A stretch of 64,000 nucleotides of DNA from assembly GCA_002269645.1 (NCBI GenBank), contig NIVC01001503.1, positions 62,001 to 126,000 on the forward strand, given 5' to 3'. The notes under the pieces were generated by a model. It saw only the letters and a list, made by a program, of their open reading frames with translations, ran no database searches and was not told the DNA's origin. Origin of the DNA: Macrostomum lignano. Lineage: Eukaryota. Shown piece after piece: positions 5,001-62,217 of this stretch (the stretch's first letter is position 1; every line of letters starts with the position of its first letter). The position numbers and the translations under genes were made by a program.

Positions 5001-8000
5001 GATTGAAGAGATCCAGCCAAGAGACAGTGAGAATAGATTGAAGATATCCAGCCAAGAGACAGTGAGAATAGATTGAAGATATCCAGCCAAGAGACAGTGA
5101 GAATAGATTGAAGAGATCCAGCCAAGAGACAGTGAGAATAGATTTAGGAGATCCAGCAAAAAGAGACAGTGAGAATAGATTGAAGATATCCAGCCAAGAG
5201 ACAGTGAGAATAGATTTAGGAGATCCAGCCAAGAGACAGTGAGAATAGATTGAAGATATCCAACCAAGAGACAGTGAGAATAGATTGAAGATATCCAGCC
5301 AAGAGACAGTGAGAATAGATTGAAGAGATCCAGCTAAGAAACAGTGAGAATAGATTTAGGAGATCCAGCAAAAAGAGACAGTGAGAATAGATTGAAGAGA
5401 TCCAGCCAAGAGACAGTGAGGATAGATTTAGTGGATCTAGCCAAGAGACAGTGAGAACGGAGACAAAAAGGGAAATGGATTTAAATTCTGAGTCCGATGC
5501 TCAACTCCCGCAGCTGGCGAGTGAACATCTCGTATTATCACAACATGACGAAGTTCGACCTGGAGGAGATGATCGACAGTCCCGAGTGGACAATCCTCAG
5601 CCACAAGGCCAAGTACAACGAGGAGGTGTACCCCTGCTGCCCGGAGCCCTACGTTGACATCACATTCTGGATTTGGATTCGCCGGTCTACCGCATTTTAC
5701 ACTTTCATCCTTATCCTGCCCTGCTTCCTGCTGTCCTCGCTGACCCTGGTCCTGTTCTGGCTGCCTCCGGAGACCCCGGCCAAGATGGTGCTCGGTGAGG
5801 CATTGTGGGACTTTGACTGCACAATTTCCTATACTTTGACTATTTCCAGGATTTTCATTTTCTTACTTTTACCCTTTTCTTTATTCTCTGAGTTTCCCTA
5901 AATTTCTCATTCCCTATACATCCCATTACCTATACATCCCATTCCCTACATATCCCATTCCCTACATATCCCATTCCTTACATTTCCCATTCCCTACATA
6001 TCCCATTCCCTACATATCCCGTTCCCTACATATCCCATTCCCTACATATCCCATTCCCTACATATCCCATTCCCTACATATCCCGTTCCCTACATATCCC
6101 ATTCCCTACATATCCCATTCCCTACATATCCCATTCCCTATACATCCCATTCCTTACATTTCCCATCCCCTACATATCCCATCCCCTACATATCCCACTC
6201 CCTACATATCCCATTCCCTATACATCCCATTCCTTACATTTCCCATCCCCTACATATCCCATTCCCTACATATCCCATTCCCTACACTTCCCATCCGCAG
6301 GCATGAACATATTCGTTGCCTTCTTCCTATTGATGCTGCTGCTGGAGAAGCAGACTCCATCGGCATCAGACTCGTTTCCGTTGATTGGTGAGTTCACAGA
6401 AATCTGTCTGGTGCTTCAGGTACTCGCCATAACCTTCATTAGTTACCTGGTCACAGAGGTGCTTTGGGCCACATGCAGCCAGCCAAGAGGACGCGCTCAC
6501 GCGGTGTCACACTCAGCCCTGACTTCTCTCCTCGTCAGACATGCACACTCTCTGAAGGCTGGCCCTCAAGGGTTGTAAAATTAATGTGGCTACGCACGGA
6601 ATCGAACCCAGGACCGTTTGGCGCGGGAGTTACCGCTGCGCTACTCCCCCCCCTCGCCGTAACCTTTGACAACTCGGCGCACTTTACCGACTGCCTGCCG
6701 GACAGCTCTTCTTTGCCAATTATTGATAATAATAGCTTGGCCAGAATAGTCGAGCATACACGCGCGCATATACATAAGCCTGGCAGTCTATCATTTCGCT
6801 CCTAGAGTACGAAGTCCCCTTTGCTGGCCCTCTATTTCTCCCTCTATTCTGGGCGCATTATCGGGTCCGGCCGAGGTCTCTGCCCCCCCCCCCCCCAGTG
6901 ATTAATGCTGGGATTCTGAATGCGAAATCTGCACTAGCTACCTTCTACTAAAATAGTGAAAGAGAGAGAGAGATGAGGGACCAGCAGCGGTGATTAATGA
7001 CGCTCTGAACTCCCTGCTTCTCCTCCTACTGCCCTGGGATTACTTTGGTGGTTCGGCCTCCGGCTGGATTCCAGGATTTCTGCCTGGCTCCGCAAATAGC
7101 CCGGATTCGAACAGTCCAGCGGTTGGCGATGAGGCCCTGGGGGGGGGGGGTAAACACTACTTGGCTCAGGTTGCAGATTTACCTGTTAAGTGGCTGGTGT
7201 ATTAGGAGAAGAAAATCAGTCTAAATAGACCGGATTACATGCTAGCTTGTAGGTCCTTGGATCGAGTCCTGGGTAGTGAGAGACCCCACCATTTTTACAA
7301 GTTTTGTCTGAACCTATTCGTTTTTCATTCACGCACGAGATAAGCACAGCTAAATTCAGCTCTATTGTTTTTTTACGTCCCTTTATGGAGCAAAGGGGCT
7401 GTAGCCTAGTGGTTAGAGCGTCGGTCTCACGAATGGAAGGTCGGAGGCTCGATTCTCGACCCAGTCGGAACAATTTGTGTCCTTGAGCAAGACACTTAAC
7501 TCTGCATTGCTTCAGTTCACCCAGCTGTAAAATGGGTGCGATGGAGTAATTAAGGGTGTGTGTGGCGACCCCCAGTCCTTGGACTGAACAGCCGTACGCA
7601 GCCTTCAAATGCATCCGGTTAAAACTTTCAGGCCAGTACTACTGCTTGAACATGGGAATCATCACCCTGTCCACTTTCCTGTCCGTGATCGTGGTGAACT
7701 TCCACTTCCGCGGCGACAACCGGCAGGAGGTGCCCTACTGGCTTAAGAAGGTGAGAACGGGGCTGTTTAGTTGGCTTTTGCTTAATTCAAAGGACGACTA
7801 GGCATTGTGGTGTAAATCAGCCTTCAAAATTTCATTTACTGATGATGATGGGCTTTCAGTGAAGTGGAGCCGATATGTAAAGATGCTTCTTGCAGTGTCC
7901 ATCAATAAGCAGAGCTGAGGGCGGTTCATAATTTTAAAATTTTATGCCACCGAAAGACAAGTTTTCACGCGCTCAAAAATTCACAAGCTCAAAAATTCAC

Positions 8001-25493: not shown

Positions 25494-28400
25494 ATGGGCA
25501 ACTCGATTGGACCCCGGAAGAAGTTGCCGAAGGAGGATATGCAGTTTCTGATGTCAAACACCAACTTTACTAAGAAGCAGATTAAGCAGTGGTATCGTGG
25601 TTTTATTGTGAGTGGAATTTTTCTGCCTTTTTTCCGTAATTGTCAGCTGCATGATCGTTGTAGCATAAATCCATTGAGGGGTACCTTGCACAAGTTATGC
25701 AGCACTCATTATCGAATACATGCTCTGACTTACAGAGGCCAGCTCCCTCAGAGTGAGCTCTGATGCACCCAAATTCTGCAGCTGGCACCCCACCGTACTC
25801 TCAGAATCCTTCAGCTGGCGCCCCATCCCACCGCAGATCCCAGATCCCTTCAGCTGGTGTCTCGCGCCCCACAACACTCCCAGATCCCTTCACCCCATCA
25901 CACTCCAATATCCCTTCAGCTGGCCTCCCTCCACCACACTCCCAGATCCCTTCACCCCATCACACTCCCAGATCCCTTCAGCTGGTGCCCCACCACACTC
26001 CCAGATTCCTTCAGCTGGCGCTCCGCGCCCCAAAACACTCCCAGATTCCTTCAGCTGGCGCTCCGCGCTCCACCACACTCCCAGATCCCTTCAGCTGGCG
26101 TTCCGCGCCCCACCACACTCCCAGATCCCTTCAGCTGGCGCTCCGCGCCCCACCACACTCCCAGATCCCTTCAGCTGGCGCTCCGCGCCCCACCACACTC
26201 CCAGATCCCTTCAGCTGGCGCTCCGCGCCCCACCACACTCCCAGATTCCTTCAGCTGGCGCTCCGCGCCCCACCACACTCCCAGATCCCTTCAGCTGGCG
26301 CTCCGCGCCCCACCACACTCCCAGATCCCTTCAGCTGGCGCTCCGCGCCCCACCACACTCCCAGATCCCTTCAGCTGGCGCTCCGCGCCCCACCACACTC
26401 CCAGATCCCTTCAGCTGGCGCTCCACGCCCACCACACTCCCAGATCCCTTCAGCTGGCGCTCCACGCCCACCACACTCCCAGATCCCTTCAGCTGGCGCT
26501 CCACGCCCACCACACTCCCAGATCCCTTCAGCTGGCGCTCCACGCCCACCACACTCCCAGATCCCTTCAGCTGGCGCCCTAACACACTCCCAGATACTTT
26601 CAGCTGGCGCCCCGCGCCCCACATTCCTTGATCCTTCAGCGCGCGCCCCGCGCCCCACCAAATTCCCAGATTCTTCATCAGGCGCCCCACCACACTCCCA
26701 GATCCCTTCAGCTGGCGCCCGCTACGCCTCTCGGATCTCTCGCAAAGCTTAAGTCGGTAAAAACAAACTGACGGCATCAGCATCCGAACCAGCATTTGGC
26801 TGCAATGCCTTCCCGTCCCAGAGAAACCATCCCGTCCTGACAACCCAGTCAATCTCTTCCGCAGAAACCTTTCTCCTTTTCCCTCCCTCACTCGCTTCCA
26901 ATTTTGCTTTTTTCAGTCGGCACTCGCTTCGCTGGCACTGAGCCCCTCCCCCCATCTCCATGCCGCCTTGCGTGCCCCATTAATTAAGGGTTCGAGTCCT
27001 GAGGTCTGGAGCGAGTGAAAGAGAGAAAAGGCAGGCAGTTGGGCAGGCAAGGGAGGCGATGGATCTGGTAGAGGAGCGCATAGTAGGCAGGAGAGCTCGG
27101 ACTGCTGCGGCTGTGCAGGAGGAAGGGGAAGGCAGGAGGTACTTGAGAGCAGAGCTCCGAGGCTCCGAAGGGGCCACTTGCGGGTTCACGCAAGCGAGAG
27201 GCGGAGAGGCGCAGAGGAGTAAAGGGCAGTAAAGTGGAATGGGTTCACAATTTAGACCAAAAGCTGAAGCTGGGAAGTGATTGACAGAGCAAGTGTAAGT
27301 GAGTGTATTATAGATGCGGCCGGTTGGAGACTGGCTCAGCTGAAGAATACTGCCCGGTGAAGATGGCCCTGTGTTTTGACAGGGCCGGGGCAGTATGGCT
27401 ACCAGGGTGCACTTTTTGGGTGTTTAGTCAGACCAGCTGGATTGACAAACACGGCTGCTCTTTAAGGTACTTCGTTCTCGTGATGGAAAAACTGTCCTCT
27501 TGCCTGGAAGTCTTGATCCCAAACTTCCTCGGTCAATTCTCCCCCTTCTACCTGGTTGATTCTCCCCTCATTCCCGGTTGATTCTCCCCTCATTCCCGGT
27601 GGATTCTCCCCTCTTTCCCGGTTGATTCTCCCCTCATTCCCGGTTGATTCTCCTCTCATTCCCGGTGGATTCTCCCCTCTTTCCCGGTTGATTCTCCCCT
27701 CATTCCCGGTTGATTCTCCTCTCATTCCCGGTGGATTCTCCCCTCATTCCCGGTTGATTCTCCCCTCATTCCCGGTTGATTCTCCCCTCATTCCCGGTTG
27801 ATTCTCCCCTCATTCCCGGTTGATTCTCCCCTCATTCCCGGTTGATTCTCCCCTCATTCCCGGTTGATTCTCCCCTCATTCCCGGTGGATTCTCCCCTCT
27901 TTCCCGGTTGATTCTCCCCTCTTTCCCGGTTGATTCTCCCCTCATTCCCGGTTGATTCTCCCCTCATTCCCGGTTGATTCTCCCCTCATTCCCGGTTGAT
28001 TCTCCCCTCATTCCCGGTTGATTCTCCCCTCTTTCCCGGTGGATTCTCCCATCTTTCCCGGTTGATTCTCCCCTCATTCCCGGTTGATTCTCCCCTCATT
28101 CCCGGTTGATTCTCCCCTCTTTCCCGGTTGATTCTCCCCTCTTTCCCGGTTGATTCTCCTCTCATTCCCGGTTGATTCTCCCCTCTTTCCCGGTTGATTC
28201 TCCCCTCATTCCCGGTTGACTTTCCCCCTTTCCGGTAGATTCTCCCCTCTTTCCCGGTTGATTCTCCCCTCATTCCCGGTTGACTTTCCCTTTATCACGG
28301 TTGAATCTACCCGTTCTCCTTTCTTCTCTGGCAGGCAAACAGGAAACAAAGACATTCTCAACCCCATTTACCCTCAGCGTGACTGTCCATCAGGCCAGCT

Positions 28401-31045: not shown

Positions 31046-31307
31046 GGGGTTGTAGCCCAGTGGTCAGAGCGTCGGACTCACGACTTGAAGGTCATGGGTT
31101 CGATTCCCGAATCCCACTGGAGCAATTTGTGTCCTTGAGCAAGACACTTAACTCTGCATTGCTTCAGTTTACCCAGCTGTAAAATGGGTGCCAGCATTAG
31201 CTGGGGTAATTGAGGGTGTGTGGCGACCCCCCAGTCCTTGGACTGAACAGCCGTACGCAGCCTTCAGATGCGCCGCGCAATGGCTGCGGCTGAGCTGTCG
31301 GTTGCAC
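31046..31307 (+). mobile_element. tRNA-derived CORE-SINE, copy 3 (most complete)
   Basis: A-box TAGCCCAGTGG, T-arm GGGTTCGATTCCC, CORE-like centre, and the same tail as copy 2. Confidence 0.9.
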
Positions 31308-33090: not shown

Positions 33091-33483
33091 GCCATCTCCA
33101 TGCATGATGGGGACAGGATCAGAAGCCGCGGTGCCATCTCCATGCATGATGGGGACAGGATCAGAAGCCGCGGTGCCATCTCCATGCATGATGGGGACAG
33201 GATCAGAAGCCGCGGTGCCATCTCCATGCATGATGGGGACAGGATCAGAAGCCGCGGTGCCATCTCCATGCATGATGGGGACAGGATCAGAAGCCGCGGT
33301 GCCATCTCCATGCATGATGGGGACAGGATCAGAAGCCGCGGTGCCATCTCCATGCATGATGGGGACAGGATCAGAAGCCGCGGTGCCATCTCCATGCATG
33401 ATGGGGACAGGATCAGAAGCCGCGGTGCCATCTCCATGCATGATGGGGACAGGATCAGAAGCCGCGGTGCCATCTCCATGCAT
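33091..33483. repeat. 42-bp perfect tandem repeat GCCATCTCCATGCATGATGGGGACAGGATCAGAAGCCGCGGT, about 9.4 copies
   Basis: Identical copies, open in four frames, so not treated as coding. Confidence 0.96.
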
Positions 33484-35425
33484 GCCGGGACTGCTGCGGG
33501 GGAGCCGTAGCCGTTAAATTTTTGCCCACAAGAGTCAATCCTTTAAGATTAGTGTGTATGTACATGTACAACCCATAGCGATGAAGAACTTCAGGGCCGA
33601 TGTGCACCCTGCATGAGCGTTTGCCTGCGTACGTATCAAAGTTGCTTACCTCTCCGCTGTCTGCGAAGGGATTGCTTGCAGTTGTTTCGGTGACAAGAAA
33701 AGACCCTTTTAGTGACAGCCGTTGTGTGTGCAGAAAATTATCTTGCCAATCTTAAGTGATGAAAACTAAAATTTCAGAGTCTGCTAAAACGGTAAAGCAT
33801 TGTTTCATTTAATTTTGTTTATGTATACTATTTTAGGGTTGCGATATTTGTATCTGTACGTTTTCTGCAACTCGCGAATATTTCTCCGTCCTTTTCTCGG
33901 TGGGAATTTCATGATGAGTATCATTTATGTTTATGTGTCTGAATATTCTGGGATGAATTAAAATGATCTGTAGAAAAATAAAACAAAATATCAGTTTGAA
34001 TTTGTTGTCCTGTGTTTTGAATTTCCTCTGTCTTGATTTGCCATCTCTCGACTTGGGTTGTTGACATCTTAGAATTGCAACAAAAAACAAAATGTAGTTC
34101 GGCAGGCTTACTTTGTTACTCAGCACACGCTTAAACAAGGTTCGTTTTCCCCTAGAAATTACAGCGTCGATTCGACAAAAATCCCCAAGGGGATCACCTG
34201 CCGGCATTGATGCAGCTACTCGATCTCCGCTTGATTCTCTAAGCGAATAATCGCATGTACCAGCCAGTAGCTACAGACGGGAGCGGCAGCAACGGAGCAG
34301 CAAGAAAACGAGCGGAATTTGATAATCGCAGTCCCCCAGGGACGGCTGGCTTCGCGGCCAGAGAGGCTGTGGTGTGTGAGATACTCCACTACTCCACTAT
34401 GGCGAGTGCCTAATGGGCTCAAAACAGCATGACCAACGCGGCAATGCGTGGCCGTCAGCTCGCTTTTTATTTATTAGTTAGCGGAGTACCGCGAGATCCG
34501 GGACAGGCTGAGAGTCTGGAAGTCGATGGCGTAATAGTACATTTGTCTATTCAATCCCGTTGGTATTACATGTAGCGCATGGAACGGGTGAGTCGCTAGT
34601 TTCGATGCAAAGTAAATAATCGACGAATAGCAGCTGCCTAGGGCTGATTTCCTTGACATTAGATGGTCACAGAAGCTACGAGTAAAGCTAAGGTCACCAC
34701 TCACGCGTAGTCCTAGCCAAAAAATATGTTTGTATTATTCACTGTAAAAATTAAAGCCATCAATTTAGCCAAGGGTCCGCAAACTCCGGCCTGTGGGCCA
34801 CACGCGACCCGCGAAGCCTCTCTATCCGGCCCTCGGGTCCTTTGAAACTTCACAATGGCAATCCGGCCCACTTACGAGTATATCCGCCCATTTACATGTA
34901 CTGCACTATAGCTTTTACTGTCAAAGTGCGACATATCATATGTAAGACGTCTACAAAAAACACACAGCTGTTCATAAATAGCCACTGTCTGACGGGCGCG
35001 GTGCGTACGAATTCATGAACAAAATCATGTGTTGTTGTTGTCCAATTGTTTTGCATGCCCACGTATACAACTAAGCAATTGGGGACATCAGTTCTGTGTG
35101 CTGCTTCTTAAAGTCTTTTGATCTAAAAAAGTACATTTAACTAGTCAGCCTACAGCAAAACCTCTATTAAATTCTGCGCTGAAATGCATTGACAATAAAA
35201 TAAATATCTGTTTAAGAAGACAGTTTCGTTCCCAATGCTGCCATGGACGTATTGCAGCATTAACACCAGGGTTGTTTACACAGACAAAACTGACTGTGCA
35301 GACCGGTTCGATGGGCTGAGTCTCGAGCGCAGCAGTTTAAGTGAGAGCTGCAGCAGCATTTGAGCTAATTTCCGAATCTGATAGATACGAGGGTACCACG
35401 GTATCACTGGCACCACCCGCAAGCA

Positions 35426-40938: not shown

Positions 40939-43239
40939 TTAATCATGTTCAAACTCTTTGAACAATGGCACAGCGCAATAACAGTCTTTGCTGAACGATT
41001 CTACTGGAACAGCGATGCAGGGTCGATCGACCTCTGAAAAATTAACTATACGTTCGCGTCTGGCCGATCTGGGCGCATTAGACAGGGATATCAATACAAA
41101 ATTGAATGTCGAAGACTTTTTGAACATGGATTCCAGCAATGCTTTCCAATTAAGTAAATCGATGGGGAAAGTTGCTGCTGGTACTCGTAAAACAAAATCA
41201 AACAGCGAACCAATGGGATCCAAAATTTGCACTCGAATAGTATTAGGCTCGAGGAACTCTGCAATAGTGCAGATTTCGCCGGACTTCAATTGGCAAAGAT
41301 GGTTAGAATTTTTCGACGCACAAGCTGAGCTTGTCGAGAAAAAATGTCCATTAAAATAAGCAAGTGAGTTTCGAAGAATACCATGTGGCCTGGATGGCTC
41401 TAAAGATATAGAGTTAACTGCATCCACTACAATAGAGTCCTTAACACAAGAAAAGTAGTGATGTAGCAACTTTTGAAACAAAAACTTGCGAACAAGCTGT
41501 GGGCCAAATGACACAGTTCCGCATAAGAACTTTTTGAACATGCCAATGGAGCTCTCAAATGCGAACATAGAATAATTAAATACAGGTCCGTACAATTCGT
41601 ACTGTTCAGCCATATGCAAAAGCAGGTGGAAATTAAGGCGGAGTACTTTCGGTCCGAATATTTGCTGAGCATTGGAGATAAAAGCTTTGCATAGCTTTTC
41701 GATATCAGTCTTATTTGATTGGGGGCTATACAACATGTGATAAATAAGAACTAAATTAGTTAACAGCAGTTTCAATGGAAAATGCGAAATTCTCTGCAAA
41801 AACGTAGGAAGAAGAAAGTATAGCGCAAAGTTTTTAAAATGCTTTGCTTTCCAATCTGAAAAGCCTTTAAAATTTGTGTTGATTGTGATGCTAGAAGGAG
41901 TTATAGATTGACGAATACAATTAGATATGAAATCCATGCAATTAGCTGAGCAAAAATACAACTCGCGCCTGTTTGCAGGTAATGACAGCTCTTCTAGTAG
42001 ATACTTGGTGTGGCCTTCGAAAAAGCAGTGTAAACTGTCAATAGGATTGCAGCTGGGAAACGGAACATAGTCTAACAAGCAACTGCGCATCTTTACGCCA
42101 AAAACAGGCCGATTTCGAATTTGTGCGAGCCGACAGTGTTCAAGATGGGAAGATGGGTTTCTCAAAGGAAACAAGTAGCCTTCACCATAGCGGAAGATCC
42201 AGTTTTTACCTTTCTCGGATACTTTAAAGCTCTCACCTGGGTGCAAGCACCTAGGACAGCTAAACGCACCATTGTACTGGTGAATGCAGAAGAGCTTAGC
42301 AAGAGCGGGCAAGTCACAAACAAAGAGTGTGTAATGGACATGAACGGTGTATTCCGAGAATATAAACTGTTTTGGCAAATTGTTCATAATTTCAGACAGA
42401 AAAGACTGGAAATGCGGGACTGCCTTCGATGAAACAAGAGCAATTAGAATTAAATTTGCAAAGCGTTGACGGATGTAAACAGGAAGGTTTAGAAGTTGAG
42501 CCTGAAATGGCCAAAAGCTACTCTGAACAGATTCAAAAAAATTGGCGCCATCAGCTGAGATTAGAAGATGCAAGTGAAGCGACTTGCCAGAAGATAGGCT
42601 TAAGCCTTGTTCTTTAACTATTTTGGAATTCAAAACGTCTGTGTTTTTATCCTTTTGCAATTCTTGCTCATACTGCAGAATAGTTGAAGTGTGGCTGCTT
42701 AAGATAGTCCGCAGCTGTGGAACAATATTGAGCTGTGTCACAGCAACCTTTGACTTTGGGGAATGAACCTGACACTGGCTTTTGCATTCTGGGCAAAAGC
42801 CAAATTCAGACACGTCACTATCATCAAGAGGGCAAGTATCTTGAATCAATGATTTGAGCAACTTGACGCTATTTGGAAGAGCTAGAGAATCTCTACTAAA
42901 AATAGAAAGTAGCTTCAGGAGTCTATCAAGAGCAGCCTCTGAAACTCCGGAAGTAATTGCCCACTGAAAAATCAGAGCCGCCTGCACACTGGGATCTGAG
43001 ATGGAAGCCAAATTCGCTAAGCTATCTGAACTCTCCTCAAGCACAGGCACAGCATTGTTTTCACCAATAAAAGTTTCCACAGCGTCAGGACAGCTGTGCG
43101 AGTGCGTTACACCGGCTTCGCTTGAAATTGAACTCCTATTACTTGTAGAAAAACTATTTGAGGGAGAAGAAATCGCCTGACAAGAGTAGGCTGAGTAATT
43201 AGTAGAAAGAGAGTGCTCAGATTCTGATTTACTAGACAT
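40939..43239 (-). CDS. EnSpm/CACTA-type DDE transposase, 766 aa, intronless and uninterrupted
   Basis: Motifs ISADGANFF (D), FVCDLPA (D), YNGAFSCPRC (CxxC), IDSLHCFFEG, WKAKHFK, NFHLLLH (HxxxH), YGPVFNYSMFAFES (E). Lies between TIRs. Confidence 0.93.
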   Translation of the reverse strand: MSSKSESEHSLSTNYSAYSCQAISSPSNSFSTSNRSSISSEAGVTHSHSCPDAVETFIGENNAVPVLEESSDSLANLASISDPSVQAALIFQWAITSGVSEAALDRLLKLLSIFSRDSLALPNSVKLLKSLIQDTCPLDDSDVSEFGFCPECKSQCQVHSPKSKVAVTQLNIVPQLRTILSSHTSTILQYEQELQKDKNTDVLNSKIVKEQGLSLSSGKSLHLHLLISADGANFFESVQSSFWPFQAQLLNLPVYIRQRFANLILIALVSSKAVPHFQSFLSEIMNNLPKQFIFSEYTVHVHYTLFVCDLPALAKLFCIHQYNGAFSCPRCLHPGESFKVSEKGKNWIFRYGEGYLFPLRNPSSHLEHCRLAQIRNRPVFGVKMRSCLLDYVPFPSCNPIDSLHCFFEGHTKYLLEELSLPANRRELYFCSANCMDFISNCIRQSITPSSITINTNFKGFSDWKAKHFKNFALYFLLPTFLQRISHFPLKLLLTNLVLIYHMLYSPQSNKTDIEKLCKAFISNAQQIFGPKVLRLNFHLLLHMAEQYELYGPVFNYSMFAFESSIGMFKKFLCGTVSFGPQLVRKFLFQKLLHHYFSCVKDSIVVDAVNSISLEPSRPHGILRNSLAYFNGHFFSTSSACASKNSNHLCQLKSGEICTIAEFLEPNTIRVQILDPIGSLFDFVLRVPAATFPIDLLNWKALLESMFKKSSTFNFVLISLSNAPRSARRERIVNFSEVDRPCIAVPVESFSKDCYCAVPLFKEFEHD

Positions 43240-52755: not shown

Positions 52756-53679
52756 CCTTGAAGATGACAGCGTGCATTTTCATTCACTAGTAAATTTTTT
52801 ATGAATTGGTATTATTTTTACCCTAGGGTGAGCTTCTACTACTCTATGCTTCACTATGTTAGCACTCTGATTTTTTGTAAGGCTTCAGCCTTGATTACTA
52901 GTACTGGAACCTATTTTCTAATAGCTATGGATCTGGCAGTCTTCTGCAGGCAGTTATTTACTAATGAAGTCTTTAAACATTTGAAGTATCTTGTTTTGAA
53001 TCTCATTATTTCATTTTGATCTTATTTTGAACAAAAGCTCAATATCAACCACCTATTAAAAAGTAAAACATTTTTTCTATATTATACCCATAAATTGCAC
53101 TATTGGAATACCATTGCCAGATCCATAGCCATTAAAAATGGGCTCTGGTGCCAGAACTCTAGCCATTGCCAACACTAACCCCCGCTACTTATATGCACAC
53201 CTATACCCAGTGTTGGGCACTGTTAATGAAAATCTTAACTTTTATTAATGGCAAAAGCATTAGTGTCAAAACAAAAAATCTTAACTTATTAACTCTTAAT
53301 TTTGTTAAGTTAACTGAAAGTTAACTGATAATTATTAATAAGCATTACTCCATTAAAGTTAACATAGAAAATACAGAAATCTGCACTTTCCCAAATAGAC
53401 TTCATAATGCACTGTCTTTGCTTGTCCATCTTTTTAGTAAAACACAGAGGTTACCTAAGCAATTTACAAGCTAAAAAGTAATACATCATAATTTCAAAAA
53501 TTTATATGTATAATACTACTAAAAGTAAGCATATGGTAAAAGAAGTAACTTTTTTATTTGGAATTTGAAAGCTAATTAGTTAATAAATAAAATATGAAGG
53601 AAATGCAAAAGTGCAAAAGTTTGTAAGAAAAATATTACACGGCTTTTATACCAAATTGTTGGTTTTTGCATGAATAAGA

Positions 53680-54109
53680 ATGCCCAAACGAAGCTGCCCA
53701 TTTGCTGACAATGCTAATCAGCTCAAAGTGCGCGTTTCCCAGAAGCTTGTGGACACGGGCGTGAATGCCGAGCAAAACATGAGTGCCGTTTATGGTGAGT
53801 GCATTTTAGAGTTACGAATTTTGATTTCACGCTACTGACTGCCTACTAACAGTAGCCAACACGACATTCTTCCGTTCCGTCCTTCTCTTTCAAGATCGCA
53901 CTTTGAAACTGTTGAATAATGGCGCTCGCAAATTCTACAACCCGTCAGCTGAGGACAGCAGCAGACTGGAGCTGCAGGCTCGCGACAGCGTCGAGTCGTT
54001 GGAGGTCAGCGAGACTGCAGAATCCAATGCTGACGTTGGCGCTGCAGCAAACCAATCTAAACTTGAACAGTTTGGCTTTGTGCGTTCACCAACTAAATCT
54101 GCGCACTAA
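53680..54109 (+). CDS. SIVA1: SIVA1 apoptosis regulator homolog; the visible part is 109 aa and lacks the C-terminal Cys-rich zinc fingers. Exons: 53680-53794, 53895-54109.
   Basis: [31 protein letters not shown]...DRTLKLLNNGA matches the SIVA1 N-terminus ([32 protein letters not shown]...EKTKRLLFLGA, from memory). A 100-bp phase-1 GT-AG intron separates the exons. Confidence 0.86.
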
Positions 54110-54289
54110 TTATCTGCTGCACATTATATTGCACTGTACATTTGTCTATTTTGTGGCACAGTTCCCTTTTTTAATACTGTGCTATATGTTTTCATTGCTA
54201 TCTATGTATGCGCAAGGCAGTTTTTGCACCATTTTTTTCTGCGACTGAGCCACGGAGTTTCAAAGAAAGAAAACTGCTGCGTGATGATA

Positions 54290-54890
54290 AATCAGCAGGC
54301 TAGTCATTAGTGTGTGATGACCAATCAGCAGGCTGGTCATTAGTGTGTGGTGACCAATCAGCAGGCTGGTCATTAGTGTGTGATGACCAATCAGCAGGCT
54401 GGTCATTAGTGTGTGGTGACCAATCAGCAGGCTGGTCATTAGTGTGTGATGACCAATCAGCAGGCTGGTCATTAGTGTGTGATGACCAATCAGCAGGCTG
54501 GTCATTAGTGTGTGGTGACCAATCAGCAGGCTGGTCATTAGTGTGTGATGACCAATCAGCAGGCTGGTCATTAGTGTGTGGTGACCAATCAGCAGGCTGG
54601 TCATTAGTGTGTGATGACCAATCAGCAGGCTGGTCATTAGTGTGTGGTGACCAATCAGCAGGCTGGTCATTAGTGTGTGATGACCAATCAGCAGGCTGGT
54701 CATTAGTGTGTGGTGACCAATCAGCAGGCTGGTCATTAGTGTGTGATGAGTGATGACCAATCGGCGAGCTGGTCTTTAGTGTGTGATGACCAATCAGTAA
54801 GCTTGGTCATTAGTGTCTTATGACCAATCAGTAAGCTTGGTCATTAGTGTCTTATGACCAATCAGTAAGCTTGGTCATTAGTCGGTAATG
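54290..54890. repeat. 33-bp minisatellite G(A/G)TGACCAATCAGCAGGCTGGTCATTAGTGTGT, mostly as a 66-bp A/G dimer
   Basis: Direct inspection; each unit has a CCAAT box and a TGACC...GGTCA stem. Confidence 0.95.
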
Positions 54891-55717
54891 ACCAATTAGT
54901 GGCACATTGATAAATAAGTGAATAAGTACTTAGACTGATGTTAAGCTACTAATTTTAGCTACTTTGAGTAGTCTATAAATGATCGTATTCTGTTTCATTT
55001 ATACTTTCCAGTTGTCGCTGACTTAAATTGATGTTATTTTTCTGTCCATTTTAGCCCATTTGTCTTTTCTCAGTATTGTTATTATTATTATTTCTTGTAT
55101 TCATAGCATCTGGCATAAAAATTGGCGTTAAAAATTATATCTCTGTCGAATGCTGCATATTTTCTATTATACCTGAAATACTACTTTCGTCTTCGGTAAA
55201 AGTAGTGTCTAATGTTTGGTGTTTCTTTGCTCTTTTTCTAATATATGAATAAGAATAACAGACACAATAAAGAACTTATGATCATTTGTATTCAGATTAA
55301 AATGACCTTTATAGATAGGACAGTAAGTACTTTGATACAAGACTACTGTTTTTTAACCATGGTAGAAACTTATAGTTTAGTTACTCATAGAAAAACTGAA
55401 TAGATCATGATTTCCCTATGACTGTACCATATCTATCCCGTTTCCAGTATTCCATTGAGTATTCCATTGCTATATTACATGAGTAGAGCATGAGTACTCT
55501 ATGACTACATCTTGCCTAAATCTAGGTCACAGCTAACCTATGACCAACTTGGACCTAGGTCATGGCTAACTTATGACCAAATTGGCCCTAAGTCATGGCT
55601 ATCATATGACTAGATGATGACTAGGTCATCGGCTCATGTCATACCTATAACTACCTGCTTAATTCCTGACCATTTAGCCACTGCCCACAAGCAAACAGAA
55701 CTGCCTGTCTGTTGCAG

Positions 55718-56311
55718 ACCGCCAGTCAGTGGCGCCGTATAGCGGTCAGTGCTCGCAGTTGCGGGCACCTCCTATTCAATCGCTACCTGTTGCTAACCAA
55801 CTGCGCAATCTGCGGCCTCAGCTCCTCGTGCGGCGATCTGATCAGCCAGAAACTGGAGTGCCGCAACAGGAAGCAATCGCTATTGTCAACAGTGAATTGG
55901 AAGCGCAATTTAACTATAGGATCGTGCGGCGTGCTGCTGGGCCCGCTCACTCACTATTGGTACCTGTTCTTAGAGAGACGCTTCCTGGGCCGGACTGCAC
56001 GCGCCCTGGTGTACAAAGTTGCCGCCGATGCGCTGCTGTTCTCGCCCGTGTACATCACTCTGTACGTTGTTAGCCTCGGCTTGATGCGCGGAGTTGGCAG
56101 GGAGGCGATTAAAGCCGATCTGTGGGAGGCCGGCCTAGAGATCTACAAGTACGAGGCCACCATATGGAGCGCTGCTCAAGCCGTTAATTTCTATTTTTTG
56201 CCAATCAGATACCGGGTTGCATTTGACAGCAGCGTGTCGCTTGCATTCGACACTTTTTACGCCAATCAGTACAACAGTGCGCCTAGCAACTCACCTGGCG
56301 ACAAAGCTTAA
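55718..56311 (+). CDS. MPV17L2: Mpv17/PMP22 family protein, MPV17L2-like (197 aa from the splice acceptor; no genomic ATG at the N-terminus)
   Basis: WRR...HLLFNRYLLLTN..CG...GDLISQ, GPLTHYWYLFLE, KVAADALLFSP, IWSAAQAVNFYFLPIRYRV. Phase-0 acceptor TTGCAG ends at 55717, and an in-frame TGA lies upstream at 55667. Confidence 0.9.
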   Translation, partial: TASQWRRIAVSARSCGHLLFNRYLLLTNCAICGLSSSCGDLISQKLECRNRKQSLLSTVNWKRNLTIGSCGVLLGPLTHYWYLFLERRFLGRTARALVYKVAADALLFSPVYITLYVVSLGLMRGVGREAIKADLWEAGLEIYKYEATIWSAAQAVNFYFLPIRYRVAFDSSVSLAFDTFYANQYNSAPSNSPGDKA

Positions 56312-56869
56312 TTAAACCTTACCGAGCCTTTACCATTTGCCTTTAAAATTGAACTCAGATTTGTAGAATATTGTGAAGGTTGAATTTCTGACAAAATACG
56401 GTCCAAAATATGCTACTTCCCACCACTTGTAGTGAGTAGTACTAATAGCGTTTCGTGCTATTAATATTTCTGACTGTTTTCAAATGTTAAAAAATTGAAC
56501 ATGTTAACAACAATTTTTAGGTCTCATATATTTATTTCGATTCTAAATTCTGTTGCTTTAATTTCGATATCAATATTGGCAAAGAATGATGAGTAATAGT
56601 TTTGATTTGATTGAAATTAGTTTGACATGCACCTGTGTTATTGTTGGTTCATTTTGTATCTGATTAAGCTTATGCAGTGATTAATGCCACGGCACATGTG
56701 AATTTCTGACTGGCTTGCTTGAACCAACCCATCGCAAATACATGAATGAAGTTACAGTGCAATATCAAGCTATGCACACCTGTTTTCTAGCTGAATCTGT
56801 AAAAATGATTTAATTTTCAATTTGACTTCTTACTTTTGCCTCCAACCACCACAGATACTACAATAATTA

Positions 56870-57402: not shown

Positions 57403-58186
57403 TACCTCATCCTTGGCCTCGAACCCCGAACTTCTGCGGTTGGAACTCTGCTTTGGATTTGGAAGGCTGGGAAACTAGAGAAACTCTATCAACTAGGACT
57501 GTTTATGTCTATATGATAGCGAATATTTGTCGATCAAAACTTTTATGCAAGTTGACAAACTTGAAAATTTTAAAAAGCAGCTATGTAAGTACGCACTTTT
57601 TTAATTCGACCAGTTCTTTATCAGATTTAGCCCTATGCTTTCCACCGATAAGAATAAGTTCTCAACTGGTTATGCATGAAAGGCGATAGCCTGTAGATAG
57701 TTCGTAGAGAGCCATTTTTTAGAAATTCGTTCGAACCTGTGTCTTTTACCCCCTTCTCATTGGGCAAAGCCAGTCTTATCCAATCGGTTGTCCGTTGCGT
57801 GTATTAGCTGTGTGCAGCTAGAACTTCAGTGTATTACATATATAGGCTCGTTCTTACAGCGTGCTGATATTTTTCAATTAATTGATAGTTTTCAATCAAC
57901 TAACTCAAATTATAAAGTCAAAGTCCCTGATTATAATCTCGGAACATCTGAATGGTGAGGCAGTGTTATATCTTATTGTTATGAATACAGTACGTGCATA
58001 AGTCATACCGGTATTTCTTAAAACCGTCGTGATATTCGAGGGTCGAGCGTCGCCACCGGGGGGGGGGCAGGGGGACATGCCCCCAGTAAAAGCTATATTG
58101 GGGAACATGCCAATGCTTTTTTCCCTCCGCCCCACCGTGACCCGTTATGGAAATCAATATTTTTTCGAAAATATAACGCCTTCGGC

Positions 58187-59625
58187 GCCAAAATGACTGC
58201 ATGCCTGCTGTGCCAAAATGAGTGCCTGCCTGCGGTGCCAAAATGAGTGCCTGCCTGCGGTGCCAAAATGAGTGCCTGCCTGCTGTGCCAAAATGAGTGC
58301 CTGCCTGCGGTGCCAAAATGAGTGCCTGCCTGCATCGCCAAAATGAGTGCCTGCCTGCGGTGCCAAAATGAGTGCCTGCCTGCATCGCCTAAATGAGTGC
58401 CTGCCTGCGGTGCCAAAATGAGTGCCTGCCTGCATCGCCAAAATGAGTGCCTGCCTGCATCGCCAAAATGAGTGCCTGCCTGCGGTGCCAAAATGAGTGC
58501 CTGCCTGCATCGCCAAAATGAGTGCCTGCCTGCATCGCCAAAATGAGTGCCTGCCTGCTGTGCCAAAATGAGTGCCTGCCTGCTGTGCCAAAATGAGTGC
58601 CTGCCTGCATCGCCAAAATGAGTGCCTGCCTGCTGTGCCAAAATGACTGCATGCCTGCTGTGCCAAAATGAGTGCCTGCCTGCATCGCCAAAATGAGTGC
58701 CTGCCTGCTGTGCCAAAATGACTGCATGCCTGCTGTGCCAAAATGAGTGCCTGCCTGCGGTGCCAAAATGAGTGCCTGCCTGCATCGCCAAAATGAGTGC
58801 CTGCCTGCGGTGCCAAAATGAGTGCCTGCCTGCGGTGCCAAAATGAGTGCCTGCCTGCTGTGCCAAAATGACTGCATGCCTGCTGTGCCAAAATGAGTGC
58901 CTGCCTGCTGTGCCAAAATGAGTGCCTGCCTGCGGTGCCAAAATGAGTGCCTGCCTGCATCGCCAAAATGAGTGCCTGCCTGCGGTGCCAAAATGAGTGC
59001 CTGCCTGCTGTGCCAAAATGAGTGCCTGCCTGCATCGCCAAAATGAGTGCCTGCCTGCGGTGCCAAAATGAGTGCCTGCCTGCGGTGCCAAAATGAGTGC
59101 CTGCCTGCTGTGCCAAAATGAGTGCCTGCCTGCATCGCCAAAATGAGTGCCTGCCTGCGGTGCCAAAATGAGTGCCTGCCTGCGGTGCCAAAATGAGTGC
59201 CTGCCTGCGGTGCCAAAATGAGTGCCTGCCTGCGGTGCCAAAATGAGTGCCTGCCTGCGGTGCCAAAATGAGTGCCTGCCTGCGGTGCCAAAATGAGTGC
59301 CTGCCTGCGGTGCCAAAATGAGTGCCTGCCTGCTGTGCCAAAATGAGTGCATGCCTGCTGTGCCAAAATGAGTGCCTGCCTGCGGTGCCAAAATGAGTGC
59401 CTGCCTGCGGTGCCAAAATGAGTGCCTGCCTGCGGTGCCAAAATGAGTGCCTGCCTGCTGTGCCAAAATGAGTGCATGCCTGCTGTGCCAAAATGAGTGC
59501 CTGCCTGCGGTGCCAAAATGAGTGCCTGCCTGCTGTGCCAAAATGAGTGCATGCCTGCTGTGCCAAAATGAGTGCCTGCCTGCGGTGCCAAAATGAGTGC
59601 CTGCCTGCGGTGCCAAAATGAGTCC
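58187..59625. repeat. 25-bp minisatellite GCCAAAATGAGTGCCTGCCT(GCGGT/GCTGT/GCATC), about 58 copies
   Basis: Direct inspection; the source of the 443-507 aa minus-strand ORFs. Confidence 0.96.
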
Positions 59626-59803
59626 CGATCATTTTGAGTCCTCATCATGAGTCCCGATGTACATGTAGTAGTAGGTAGTATTCCGTAATTCATGGATGTT
59701 CCGATGGTGATTATGGCCAAATTCTATCCCGAGTTGCGCTGAGATCTCGTCCTATCAGCCTTCGCGAAATTCAACTGTTTTTTTCATTCAATCACGAGCG
59801 CAG

Positions 59804-62217
59804 GACCCCGACGATGAGCCGATAGTAAAGCTGGAACAGCAGACCTACATTGTGTACAAGTCTCGCTGGTTCATTCTGACCATCTACGGCCTGTTGATCA
59901 CATTTCAAGGCTCACTGTGGAACACCTGGGGCCCGCTGCACGACAACATGGAGCTTGCCTACAATTGGGACTCCGTCACGTTCGGCCTGTTGCCGTTCTG
60001 GGGCCCATTCTGCTACGTCCTCTCCTTCCTGCCCTGGACTTGGCTCATGAACTCCAAGGGCCTTCGGCTGCCAGTGCTGCTCAGCGCCGGGCTCGTGCTG
60101 GCCGGCTGTCTGGCTAAACTGCCCGCTCCTTTCGTCTCTGACGATCTGTTTCGCATTCTGTGCCACGTGTGCGGCTTTCTCAACGGCCTGGCCGCGCCAG
60201 CCCTGTTCACCACTCCGCCAATGCTGGCCGCCATCTGGTTTCCTAGAAATGAGAGAGTGACAGCCACCGCTATTGGCGGATCTTGCCAGGGCCTGGCTAT
60301 TGCCGCTTCTTTTATCATTGGTTTGTTCTTGCTTTTTTAGTTTTTGTGCTTTATGAATTGAGACTTCGTCACTCCAGTTGTAGGAAGTGAGGCTCTTCAG
60401 AGGTAATTTGTCACTCCAGTTGTAGGAAGTGAGGCTCTTCAGAGGTAATTTGTCACTCCAGTTGTAGGAAGTGAGGCTCTTCAGAGGTAATTTGTCACTC
60501 CAGTTGTAGGAAGTGAGGCTCTTCAGAGGTAATTTGTCACTCCAGTTGTAGGAAGTGAGGCTCTTCAGAGGTAATTTGTCACTCCAGTTGTAGGAAGTGA
60601 GGCTCTTCAGAGGTAATTTGTCACTCCAGTTGTAGGAAGTGAGGCTCTTCAGAGGTAATTTGTCACTCCAGTTGTAGGAAGTGAGGCTCTTCAGAGGTAA
60701 TTTGTCACTCCAGTTGTAGGAAGTGAGGCTCTTCAGAGGTAATTTGTCACTCCAGTTGTAGGAAGTGAGGCTCTTCAGAGGTAATTTGTCACTCCAGTTG
60801 TAGGAAGTGAGGCTCTTCAGAGGTAATTTGTCACTCCAGTTGTAGGAAGTGAGGCTCTTCAGAGGTAATTTGTCACTCCAGTTGTAGGAAGTGAGGCTCT
60901 TCAGAGGTAATTTGTCACTCCAGTTGTAGGAAGTGAGGCTCTTCAGAGGTAATTTGTCACTCCAGTTGTAGGAAGTGAGGCTCCGAGGTTGTCACTCCAG
61001 TTGTAGGAAGTGAGGCTCTTCAGAGGTAATTTGTCACTCCAGTTGTAGGAAGTGAGGCTCTTCAGAGGTAATTTGTCACTCCAGCTGTAGGAAATGAGGC
61101 TCCGAGGTTTTCACTCCAGTTGTAGGAAGTGAGGCTCTTCAGAGGTAATTTGTCACTCCAGCTGTAGGAAGTGAGGCTCCGAGGTTTTCACTCCAGCTTT
61201 AAGTTTTCGACTCAATTTTGAGATCGTCACTTCTGTCCTTCAGTGTCCATCGTATCTATAACCAACATTCTTCCAGGACCGCTCTTTGTGCCAGAAGTGA
61301 GCAACAGCACTCTGCGAGAAGCAAATTCAACGGATATTATCATAGAGTGAGCGAATGTACAATTATGAACACCTTCAAATTTACAGAGCAGCAATTGTGA
61401 CAAACTCTTTTACTTGTGCACAATATCCAGAAACATTAAGAGCGAAGTTTACGTGCTGAACTACTCGCAGCTGGGCATCGCTCTTGCAATATTCGCTGTC
61501 ATTCTCGCCTACTTTCCTAACCGACCACCAACGCCGCCTGCCGTGTCGTGCGAAGTCGAACGCGTTAACCTTGCCGCCGGTCTGAAATCGCTGTCAATTA
61601 ACACCTGGCTGGTGGTGATGGCCTACGGCCTGCCGCTGGGCGTCTCCGCCGGCTTCAGTGCCGCCTTCGACGTCAACGTCAGCCAATACGGCATTGGCCA
61701 GACTCAGGCCGGTTGGATGGGCTTCGTCGCCGTCCTGACTGGCACCGTCGTGAGCCTGTTGGCCGCCAGACTCATCGACTGGTTTCCAAACGCATCTATG
61801 AAATGGTTCAACATCGTGTTCTTGGGCGTTGCGACCCTGTGCTACGTGTGGTTCACGCTCATATTCGACAAGGTACTGCCCGGAGACACCGCTTCGATCT
61901 ACGTGGCAAACGTGCTGGCCAACACCGCACTCTATTCTTCTCTGCCGCTTTTCTACGAGATGGCCTGCGAGTCCGCATTCCCCATAGCCGAGGAGGTGCC
62001 CGCGATGCTCATCACCAGCGTCAACTGCTTCTTTGCCAGCGTGTTTCTCGCCCTGTTTTTCTTTCCCCAAATTGGAACGCTCTGGATGAACTACGTCATG
62101 ACTGGGGCCTGCGCCACCGCCGTGCCGCTTCTAGTCCTGTTCCGGGAGGTTCACAACAGGCGGAATCTGGACCTAACGGCGCAGGTCGGGGCTCAATCCG
62201 ACGGTCGTCTGCAGTAA
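59804..62217 (+). CDS. SLC49A4: MFS transporter SLC49A4/DIRC2-like (457 aa from the acceptor; no upstream in-frame ATG). Exons: 59804-60320, 61277-61346, 61431-62217.
   Basis: YKSRWFIL...FQGSLWNTWGPL...WGP...NGLAAP...WFPRNERVTATAI...IGPLFVP...YFPNRPPTPP match DIRC2-family motifs. Exon phases 1 and 2 fit GT-AG introns. AATAAA at 62297. Confidence 0.9.
60368..61198. repeat. 42-bp minisatellite TCACTCCAGTTGTAGGAAGTGAGGCTCTTCAGAGGTAATTTG, about 20 copies, filling SLC49A4 intron 1
   Basis: Direct inspection. Confidence 0.96.

What the first reader, a model, noticed from the sequence alone, without database searches (positions are those of the whole stretch)
55667..55760. MPV17L2 has no start codon of its own; a splice acceptor sits exactly where Met1 should be
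Seen: an in-frame TGA at 55667 and no ATG before the conserved domain (first in-frame ATG is far inside, MRGVG). The acceptor CTGTCTGTTGCAG ends at 55717 in phase 0, with a CTGAC branch-like site about 48 nt upstream. Adding one Met gives M-TASQWRRIAVSARSCGHLLFNRYLLLTN, which lines up with the human MPV17L2 N-terminus M-ARGGWRRL...GQLLF...LLVTN (from memory). Known: flatworm spliced leaders end in AUG, and this AUG has been shown to serve as initiator Met in Schistosoma. Inference: translation depends on SL trans-splicing.
Basis: partly seen in the sequence, partly recalled or inferred. Interest (0 to 1): 0.82.

Follow-up and report, generated by a model that had tools for sequence, protein, structure and literature searches.

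The report
Spliced leader supplies MPV17L2 start codon
In the flatworm Macrostomum lignano, this mitochondrial-membrane-protein gene has no start codon of its own and almost certainly takes it from the AUG that ends the trans-spliced leader RNA; this mechanism is already known in flatworms, so the case is real but ordinary.

Summary
There is an in-frame TGA at 55667-69. A TTGCAG acceptor ends at 55717 in phase 0. An intact 197-codon Mpv17/PMP22 ORF runs 55718-56308, and its first ATG is codon 123.

The window is Macrostomum lignano (NIVC01001503.1). Its single spliced leader (SL) ends ...TTGCATG. GenBank lists all three genomic copies of this gene as 5'-partial proteins that start 0-6 nt after the acceptor.

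Adding exactly one Met puts the conserved LLxTN motif at residue 28. That is the position in vertebrate MPV17L2, and the interquartile range of 107 relatives is 28-29.

One paralogous copy reads CATG|ACC where the others read GCAG|ACC. The neighbouring Siva gene shows the mirror case, GCATG against TTCAG. The assembly was Pilon-polished with RNA-seq, so I read these as mRNA junction sequence overwritten onto the genome. That is accidental evidence that an ATG abuts ACC in the mRNA.

No transcript reads could be inspected directly. A cis exon ending in ATG (55359, poor donor) is not strictly excluded.

SL-AUG initiation is established in Schistosoma (Cheng et al. 2006). This is therefore a new member of a known kind and of modest interest. 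Its practical value is for annotation and as a caveat about the assembly.

The parts
55666..55670 (+). CTGAC, a possible branch point 47-51 nt upstream of the acceptor AG. It contains the in-frame stop TGA 55667-69.
   Evidence: Sequence. Weak evidence: CTRAY is common by chance.
55700..55717 (+). End of the outron: a pyrimidine-rich tract and the acceptor TTGCAG (55712-17), with the AG at 55716-17 in phase 0.
   Evidence: Sequence. It matches the published M. lignano trans-splice acceptor motif [T/C]TNCAG (PMC8629364). It is identical in copy L001; in copy L002, bases 55714-16 GCA are replaced by CAT, giving CATG|ACC.
55718..56311 (+). Single coding exon of the MPV17L2 orthologue: 197 codons plus TAA, with no initiator codon. 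With the SL AUG added, the product is 198 aa and starts MTASQW...
   Evidence: Translation. Pfam PF04117 at 1.3e-13. The closest named relatives are almost all 'mpv17-like protein 2'. GenBank entries PAA54430.1 and PAA51805.1 are marked 'partial'.
56084..56086 (+). First genome-encoded in-frame ATG (MRGVG). Starting here would lose 123 residues, including the conserved N-terminal half.
   Evidence: and alignment A3.
55359..55361 (+). The only ATG|GT in the spacer (AACCATG|GTAGAAAC). This is the rival cis exon that could supply an ATG.
   Evidence: The donor is a poor fit to GT[G/A]AG. It is 100% conserved in all copies, but so is the surrounding spacer. It is absent from the public gene models.
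53666..53672 (+). TTGCATG immediately 5' of the Siva transcript start at 53673. This is the SL tail written over the Siva trans-splice acceptor; copy L002 keeps TTTTCAG here.
   Evidence: Alignment A2. The polishing method is given in PMC5730564.
53680..54109 (+). Upstream gene Siva on the same strand. It has two exons (intron 53795-53894) and its own ATG 8 nt after the junction. The SL AUG is out of frame with it.
54281..54896 (.). 33-bp tandem repeat, 18 copies, in the Siva-MPV17L2 spacer. A second array lies at 55522-55634. Together they reduce the repeat-adjusted spacer to 879 nt.
   Evidence: The operon criterion of <1 kb after repeat adjustment comes from PMC8629364.
57952..57954 (+). 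Annotated start codon of the downstream MFS_1 gene. This ATG is the last 3 nt of an upstream exon (ATG|GTGAGG). It is spliced in phase 0 to exon 2 at 59804, which has no ATG of its own.

Best explanation
The gene is the Macrostomum lignano orthologue of MPV17L2. It is encoded in one exon that begins at codon 2.

The pre-mRNA comes either from a promoter of its own or as the downstream part of a Siva-MPV17L2 polycistron. It is trans-spliced at the TTGCAG acceptor ending at 55717 to the 35-nt spliced leader CGGTCTCTTACTGCGAAGACTCAATTTATTGCATG.

The last three bases of the leader then abut ACC GCC AGT in frame. They act as the only available initiator codon and give a 198-aa protein, MTASQWRR... 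Without trans-splicing no full-length protein can be made, because the next AUG is codon 124.

What is shown: the anatomy, the species and its SL sequence, the fit of the N-terminal length, and the 5' ends of the gene models.

What is inferred: that the SL is joined at this site (indirect evidence), and that ribosomes start at the SL AUG (by analogy with Schistosoma).
For: - Anatomy: stop at 55667, no ATG, phase-0 acceptor, sharp GC step.
- Species: M. lignano.
- The SL ends in ATG and is the only SL described. A 2023 paper labels that ATG 'translation start codon'.
- The acceptor matches [T/C]TNCAG.
- The public models were built by cutting transcripts at SL-read peaks. They begin 0, 3 and 6 nt after the AG in the three copies and are 5'-partial. 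The same pipeline did find an ATG-terminal 5' exon for the neighbouring MFS_1 gene.
- With one Met added, T of the LLxTN motif falls at residue 28. In 107 closest relatives the quartiles are 28-29, and vertebrate MPV17L2 has exactly 28.
- Copy L002 has CATG|ACC in place of GCAG|ACC. Within 2.3 kb this triple makes up three of only five L002-private differences. Siva shows GCATG against TTCAG in the other copies. The assembly was Pilon-polished with RNA-seq.
- Purifying selection: 4 synonymous against 1 non-synonymous difference among the copies.
- Precedent: the SL AUG is in frame in 28% of S. mansoni trans-spliced mRNAs, and more than 40 cDNAs need it (Cheng et al. 2006, as summarised in PMC9851317).
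Against: - No SL-containing read, cDNA, ribosome footprint or peptide for this gene could be examined.
- No supplementary table listing this gene was found.
- The 4-nt CATG imprint is equally compatible with the candidate cis exon ending ..AACCATG at 55361.
- The gene-model starts differ by 3 and 6 nt between identical copies. I cannot explain this.
- The SL AUG has a weak context (U at -3). On the neighbouring Siva mRNA it must be bypassed, so initiation there is probably leaky.
Confidence: 0.85

Rival explanations
1. A cis-spliced 5' exon that ends in ATG supplies the start codon, as annotated for the neighbouring MFS_1 gene. The only candidate is AACCATG|GTAGAA at 55359-61.
For: MFS_1 next door is annotated exactly this way: ATG|GTGAGG at 57952-54 spliced in phase 0 to an ATG-less exon at 59804. 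The candidate also ends in CATG, so it fits the L002 imprint. Sharing of one acceptor between cis- and trans-splicing is reported in parasitic flatworms.
Against: GTAGAA departs from the GT[G/A]AG donor consensus. None of the three public gene models contains such an exon, although the pipeline found the MFS_1 one. Conservation is uninformative because the whole spacer is near-identical.
Confidence: 0.07
2. The CATG in copy L002 is a real allele, not a polishing artefact. That homeologue would have a genome-encoded ATG and no acceptor, and would be translated without the SL, while the window copy still depends on the SL.
For: The sequence is in the public assembly. M. lignano is a recent polyploid with diverging copies.
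Against: Three adjacent substitutions recreate exactly the SL's last bases at exactly the junction, on a background that is otherwise identical to L001 across the CDS. The reciprocal pattern occurs at Siva, where the ATG has no coding role and is out of frame. Polishing with RNA-seq is documented. The L002 gene model starts downstream of that ATG and is still 'partial'. An unspliced 5' UTR would carry several out-of-frame ATGs.
Confidence: 0.08
3. A Siva-MPV17L2 read-through or fusion transcript uses the Siva ATG.
For: Both genes are on the same strand, and the repeat-adjusted spacer is 879 nt.
Against: Siva exon 1 is 115 nt (phase 1), so joining it to 55718 reads MPV17L2 out of frame. Siva exon 2 ends in a stop codon.
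Confidence: 0.01
4. The locus is not translated into a full-length protein. It would be a decaying copy, or would start at the internal AUG or at a non-AUG codon.
For: There is no genome-encoded start codon.
Against: The 197-codon ORF is intact in three copies, with a 4:1 synonymous to non-synonymous ratio. All conserved family positions are kept. Starting at Met124 removes the conserved N-terminal half.
Confidence: 0.03

Closest known systems
Schistosoma mansoni mRNAs that use the SL 3'-terminal AUG as initiator Met (Cheng, Cohen, Ndegwa and Davis, J Biol Chem 2006; cited in PMC12582326 and PMC9851317)
   Same: A flatworm SL ending in AUG is joined in frame to an exon that has no AUG of its own, so the SL provides Met1.
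   Different: The species is free-living and early-branching (Macrostomorpha) and has a different SL sequence. Use of the AUG has not been tested experimentally for this gene or, as far as the searchable literature shows, for any M. lignano gene.
slORFs: ORFs created by SL addition (slORFfinder, PMC9851317)
   Same: The start codon lies in the leader and the body of the ORF in the recipient exon.
   Different: Here the slORF is the canonical, conserved protein, not an alternative or extended ORF.
Downstream genes of SL-resolved operons (C. elegans; M. lignano operons in PMC8629364)
   Same: There is an upstream trans-spliced gene on the same strand, and the repeat-adjusted spacer is under the published 1-kb criterion.
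   Different: The polycistronic precursor is not shown here. As I recall, nematode SL1 and SL2 carry no AUG, so they resolve operons without donating a start codon.
Vertebrate MPV17L2 (Mpv17/PMP22 family, PF04117)
   Same: 30-40% identity across the whole length, the same conserved motifs, and the same N-terminal length to the residue once Met is added.
   Different: The gene is a single exon here, and Met1 is not genome-encoded. Localisation and function are untested.

Membership tests
SL-AUG-initiated flatworm mRNAs | The organism has a spliced leader whose last three bases are AUG | tested here: met
   The species was identified as M. lignano from exact protein matches. The SL is CGGTCTCTTACTGCGAAGACTCAATTTATTGCATG in PMC8629364 and eLife 20607. 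The SL RNA gene itself is not in the window.
SL-AUG-initiated flatworm mRNAs | The SL is actually joined at this acceptor | tested here: inconclusive
   The evidence is indirect only: a motif match, 5'-partial gene models that start at the acceptor and come from a pipeline that cuts at SL-read peaks, and the CATG imprint in copy L002. No reads could be inspected.
SL-AUG-initiated flatworm mRNAs | The SL AUG is in frame with the ORF and no other in-frame AUG lies upstream of the conserved region | tested here: met
   Phase-0 acceptor, stop at 55667, next ATG at codon 124.
SL-AUG-initiated flatworm mRNAs | The protein so defined has a complete N-terminus compared with its homologues | tested here: met
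   The LLxTN motif is at residue 28 after adding one Met. In 107 relatives the interquartile range is 28-29, and vertebrates have 28. In 92 more distant relatives the median is 30.
SL-AUG-initiated flatworm mRNAs | Ribosomes initiate at the SL AUG | not testable with these tools
   This needs ribosome profiling, N-terminal proteomics or a reporter.
Mpv17/PMP22 family, MPV17L2 group | Significant match to PF04117, and closest named relatives are MPV17L2 | tested here: met
   Pfam E = 1.3e-13. 3015 relatives in the representative library. Almost all named hits to the profile are 'mpv17-like protein 2'.
Mpv17/PMP22 family, MPV17L2 group | Mitochondrial inner-membrane localisation | not testable with these tools
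   No experimental data. Structure and targeting were not modelled.
M. lignano operon (Ustyantsev and Berezikov 2021 criterion) | Adjacent same-strand trans-spliced genes less than 1 kb apart after subtracting repeats | tested here: met
   From the Siva stop at 54109 to the acceptor at 55717 is 1608 nt. Subtracting 729 nt of tandem repeats leaves 879 nt. The Siva 3' end was not mapped.
M. lignano operon (Ustyantsev and Berezikov 2021 criterion) | A polycistronic precursor RNA exists | not testable with these tools
   No RNA data are available here.

The most novel reading that the evidence does not exclude
The SL-tail bases found in the genome are real alleles, not polishing artefacts. These are CATG at the MPV17L2 acceptor of one homeologue and GCATG at the Siva acceptor of two others. 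In that case, homeologous copies in this young polyploid would be caught switching between an SL-donated and a genome-encoded start codon, for example through RNA-templated conversion of the 5' end from trans-spliced mRNA.
Probability: 0.07. Interest if true: 0.6.

Novelty: new member of a known kind. Interest (0 to 1): 0.3.

Why it matters
Biologically, this adds a conserved mitochondrial-protein gene from an early-branching, free-living flatworm to the set of genes that cannot be translated without the SL AUG. That fits the view that the terminal AUG is a functional, ancient feature of flatworm spliced leaders.

There are three practical consequences.
- Public M. lignano proteins flagged 'partial' at the 5' end may be complete apart from one Met. 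They can be repaired by rule where a trans-splice site is in phase 0.
- The Mlig_3_7 assembly appears to carry SL-tail bases written over some trans-splice acceptors. These destroy AG acceptors and create false ATGs, so splice-site statistics and start-codon calls from this assembly need care.
- M. lignano is transgenic-competent, so whether the SL AUG acts as an initiator could be tested directly.

Tried and rejected
- **Retrogene carrying an SL remnant.** The gene is intronless and TGTTGCAG resembles the SL tail TATTGCATG. Rejected: the 35 nt upstream align to the SL no better than the upstream regions of 338 other YTNCAG sites in the window (67% score at least as well). The resemblance is simply the acceptor motif.
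- **Window-wide count of SL-tail k-mers as a test for imprints.** Uninformative. TTGCATG occurs 13 times against 7.4 expected, and TGCATG is inflated by tandem repeats. The best 8-mer site (41935, minus strand) heads a DUF4218 transposon-like ORF.
- **Count of clustered substitutions between copies as a null.** Confounded by tandem-repeat variants, and by BLAST opening gaps at the two junctions. I used the MAFFT column comparison instead.
- **Rfam scan.** Only a tRNA was found, and no SL RNA. Searches for the SL sequence found nothing in the window.
- **Supplementary tables for Mlig002842.** None were held or none matched.
- **Transcript contigs carrying the SL.** The protein collection holds only the three GenBank entries.
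- **Logan contigs of four distant homologues.** Their organisms are unknown. Two (L004, L005) appear to be multi-gene genomic contigs and were not read further. The two read (L006, L007) have their own ATG and no recognisable SL.
- **Siva exon 1 as an ATG donor.** Out of frame.
- **Bacterial promoter/terminator scan.** Irrelevant to a eukaryote.

Full report
**What is in the sequence.**
- TGA at 55667-69 is in frame with the downstream ORF.
- The tract CTGCCTGTCTGTTGCAG ends at 55717.
- From 55718 the frame reads TASQWRRIAVSARSCGHLLFNRYLLLTN... for 197 codons, to TAA at 56309-11.
- There is no in-frame ATG before 56084 (MRGVG). That is codon 124 of the protein once a Met is added.
- GC content rises from 0.47 in the 100 nt before 55718 to 0.60 in the 100 nt after it. 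It falls to 0.30 after the stop.
- The ORF matches Pfam Mpv17_PMP22 at E = 1.3e-13.

**Which organism and gene.** An exact-sequence look-up puts the protein in a cluster of three GenBank entries from Macrostomum lignano assembly GCA_002269645.1. Two are named 'BOX15_Mlig002842g1, partial' and '...g2, partial'. The window is NIVC01001503.1:62001-126000.

A full HMMER scan of 1.84 billion representative proteins gave 3015 relatives, the best at about 40% identity. A profile built from the best hits returned proteins that are almost all named 'mpv17-like protein 2'.

**The leader.** M. lignano has one described spliced leader (SL), CGGTCTCTTACTGCGAAGACTCAATTTATTGCATG.
- It is attached to 30-39% of genes (PMC8629364; PMC5730564; eLife 20607).
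- Its only ATG is its last three bases.
- The most enriched motif at M. lignano trans-splice acceptors is [T/C]TNCAG. The site here is TTGCAG.
- That motif occurs 2.6 times per kb per strand in the window, so the match is necessary rather than persuasive.
- The SL RNA gene is not in the window.

**Is exactly one residue missing?** This is the sharpest test available.
- With one Met added, the T of the conserved LLxTN motif falls at residue 28.
- Among the 107 closest relatives that start with Met, the 25th, 50th and 75th percentiles of that position are 28, 29 and 29. Vertebrate MPV17L2 proteins have it at exactly 28, for example [29 protein letters not shown].
- Among 92 more distant relatives the median is 30.
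- One homologue even starts MTAWRRAADALKRF..., very close to (M)TASQWRRIAVSARS.

No N-terminal segment is missing apart from the Met.

**Gene models.** The public annotation was made by cutting assembled transcripts at peaks of trimmed SL-containing reads (the TBONE pipeline) and then calling ORFs.
- The three copies have CDSs that begin 0 nt (g1), 3 nt (the window copy) and 6 nt (g2) after the AG. None has an upstream exon, and the two named GenBank entries are marked 'partial'; the window copy likewise begins without a Met.
- The same pipeline did recover a 5' exon ending in ATG for the neighbouring MFS_1 gene. Its failure to find one here therefore carries some weight.
- I cannot explain the 3- and 6-nt offsets between otherwise identical copies.

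**An unexpected witness.** I aligned the three genomic copies.
- Around the acceptor they are identical for about 100 nt on each side, except that L002 (NIVC01003354.1) reads CTGTCTGTTCATG|ACC where the window and L001 read CTGTCTGTTGCAG|ACC.
- Across 2326 aligned columns, L002 differs privately from the other two at only five columns. Three of them are this consecutive triple.
- At the 5' end of the upstream Siva gene the pattern is reversed. The window and L001 read GGTTTTTGCATG|AATAAG, while L002 keeps a canonical GGTTTTTTTCAG|AATAAA.
- In both cases the altered bases reproduce the end of the SL (..TTGCATG) immediately 5' of the transcript start.
- The methods of the assembly paper state that the Canu assembly was polished with Pilon using Illumina DNA reads and RNA-seq mapped by STAR.

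The simplest reading is that RNA reads with a few SL bases overhanging the junction were aligned with mismatches, and Pilon then 'corrected' the genome to match them. If so, the assembly itself records that the mature mRNA has CATG directly in front of ACC GCC AGT.

This is an inference, with two caveats. It could be a real allele, which I think unlikely for the reasons given under the rival explanations. Also, four bases cannot separate the SL tail (..TTGCATG) from the one candidate cis exon (..AACCATG|GTAGAA at 55359-61). The Siva imprint (GCATG after TT) does match the SL specifically.

**Rivals.**
- The candidate cis exon has a poor donor against the GT[G/A]AG consensus and is in no gene model.
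- A Siva-MPV17L2 fusion is out of frame. Siva exon 1 is 115 nt, and exon 2 ends in a stop.
- A dead gene is unlikely. The three copies differ at five CDS positions, four of them synonymous. Assuming roughly three-quarters of random coding changes are non-synonymous, that split has a binomial probability of about 0.016.
- An SL remnant from retroposition is not supported.

**Mechanism proposed.**
- The pre-mRNA is trans-spliced at 55717/55718.
- The mature 5' end is cap-CGGUCUCUUACUGCGAAGACUCAAUUUAUUGC-AUG-ACC-GCC..., with a 32-nt 5' UTR.
- Initiation at the SL AUG gives the 198-aa protein.
- The gene may be the downstream member of an operon with Siva. Both are on the same strand, Siva appears trans-spliced too, and the spacer from the Siva stop to the acceptor is 1608 nt, of which 729 nt are tandem repeats. 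That leaves 879 nt, under the published 1-kb repeat-adjusted criterion. Canonical poly(A) signals at 55266 and 55296 would leave about 400 nt. None of this part is shown.

**Context in the same cluster.** Three neighbouring genes relate to the SL AUG in three different ways.
- Siva has its own AUG 8 nt after the junction. There the SL AUG opens an out-of-frame 12-codon overlapping uORF, MNKNAQTKLPIC*. Ribosomes must therefore often skip the SL AUG, which has U at -3.
- MPV17L2 needs the SL AUG.
- MFS_1 is annotated with an ATG that forms the last three bases of an upstream exon (57952-54, donor GTGAGG). It is spliced in phase 0 to an exon at 59804 that has an in-frame stop 31 codons upstream and no ATG. 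It has the same anatomy as MPV17L2, solved in cis. Alternatively, that micro-junction could itself be a misplacement of SL-overhang reads, since TGAATG|GTGAG resembles TGCATG|GTAAG. I could not decide between these.

**Comparison with what is known.**
- All reported flatworm SLs end in AUG.
- In S. mansoni that AUG is in frame in 28% of trans-spliced mRNAs, and more than 40 cDNAs need it (Cheng et al. 2006, as cited).
- For Macrostomum, a 2023 genome paper labels the SL's final ATG 'translation start codon' and deliberately left it untrimmed.
- I found no paper that names M. lignano genes dependent on it.

**Verdict.** The finding is a new member of a known kind. The interest is modest, at 0.3. 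The by-products are a rule for completing 'partial' M. lignano proteins and the apparent SL-tail imprints in the reference assembly. These may be of more practical use than the case itself.

Noticed in passing
window 53666-53672 (also L001 7525-7531), compared with L002 about 7925-7931: The Siva trans-splice acceptor reads TTTTTGCATG| in the window and L001 but TTTTTTTCAG| in L002. The four changed bases recreate the SL tail. This is probably an artefact of polishing the Mlig_3_7 assembly with RNA-seq. It destroys the AG acceptor in the assembly.
   Followed up: partly
L002 9991-9994 (NIVC01003354.1 about 27308-27311, minus strand): The MPV17L2 acceptor GCAG is replaced by CATG in this copy only. 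This creates an apparent genome-encoded ATG in frame with the CDS. The public gene model for this copy still starts downstream of it and is 'partial'.
   Followed up: partly
window 57952-57959 and 59710-59804: The annotated start codon of MFS_1 is the last 3 nt of an upstream exon (ATG|GTGAGG). Exon 2 (from 59804, phase 0) has no ATG and has an in-frame stop 31 codons upstream. This may be a real cis solution to the same anatomy, or a misplaced SL overhang, which would make MFS_1 a second SL-AUG-dependent gene.
   Followed up: partly
window 53673-53710: On the Siva mRNA the SL AUG is out of frame. It opens a 12-codon uORF (MNKNAQTKLPIC*) that overlaps the Siva AUG at 53680. Siva translation therefore needs leaky scanning past the same AUG that MPV17L2 needs.
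   Followed up: partly
window 54281-54896 and 55522-55634: Two 33-bp tandem arrays lie in the Siva-MPV17L2 spacer. The unit of the first array is GTGATGACCAATCAGCAGGCTGGTCATTAGTGT. It contains a CCAAT-box-like CCAATCAG inside an inverted repeat (ATGACCA...TGGTCAT). Array lengths appear to differ between the three copies.
   Followed up: no
window 58186-59623: A long 25-bp tandem array (CCTGCNGTGCCAAAATGAGTGCCTG-like units with GGT/TGT/ATC variants) fills the first intron of MFS_1. Its length and variant order differ between copies, and it is much expanded in L002.
   Followed up: no
window 33100-33490: About ten 42-bp tandem repeats that are open in both strands' frames (MMGTGSEAAVPSPC... and MEMAPRLLILSPSC...).
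   Followed up: no
window 40939-41937 (minus strand): A 332-codon ORF with a weak DUF4218 (transposase-associated) match. It starts at ATTGCATG, which equals the last 8 nt of the SL by chance. It is probably part of a transposable element.
   Followed up: partly
window 31046-31116 (+): The only Rfam match above threshold is a tRNA (33.1 bits).
   Followed up: no
window 56309-56316: ATTAAA overlaps the MPV17L2 stop codon (TAATTAAA). If it is used as the poly(A) signal, the 3' UTR would be only a few tens of nt. The next AATAAA is at 57078.
   Followed up: no
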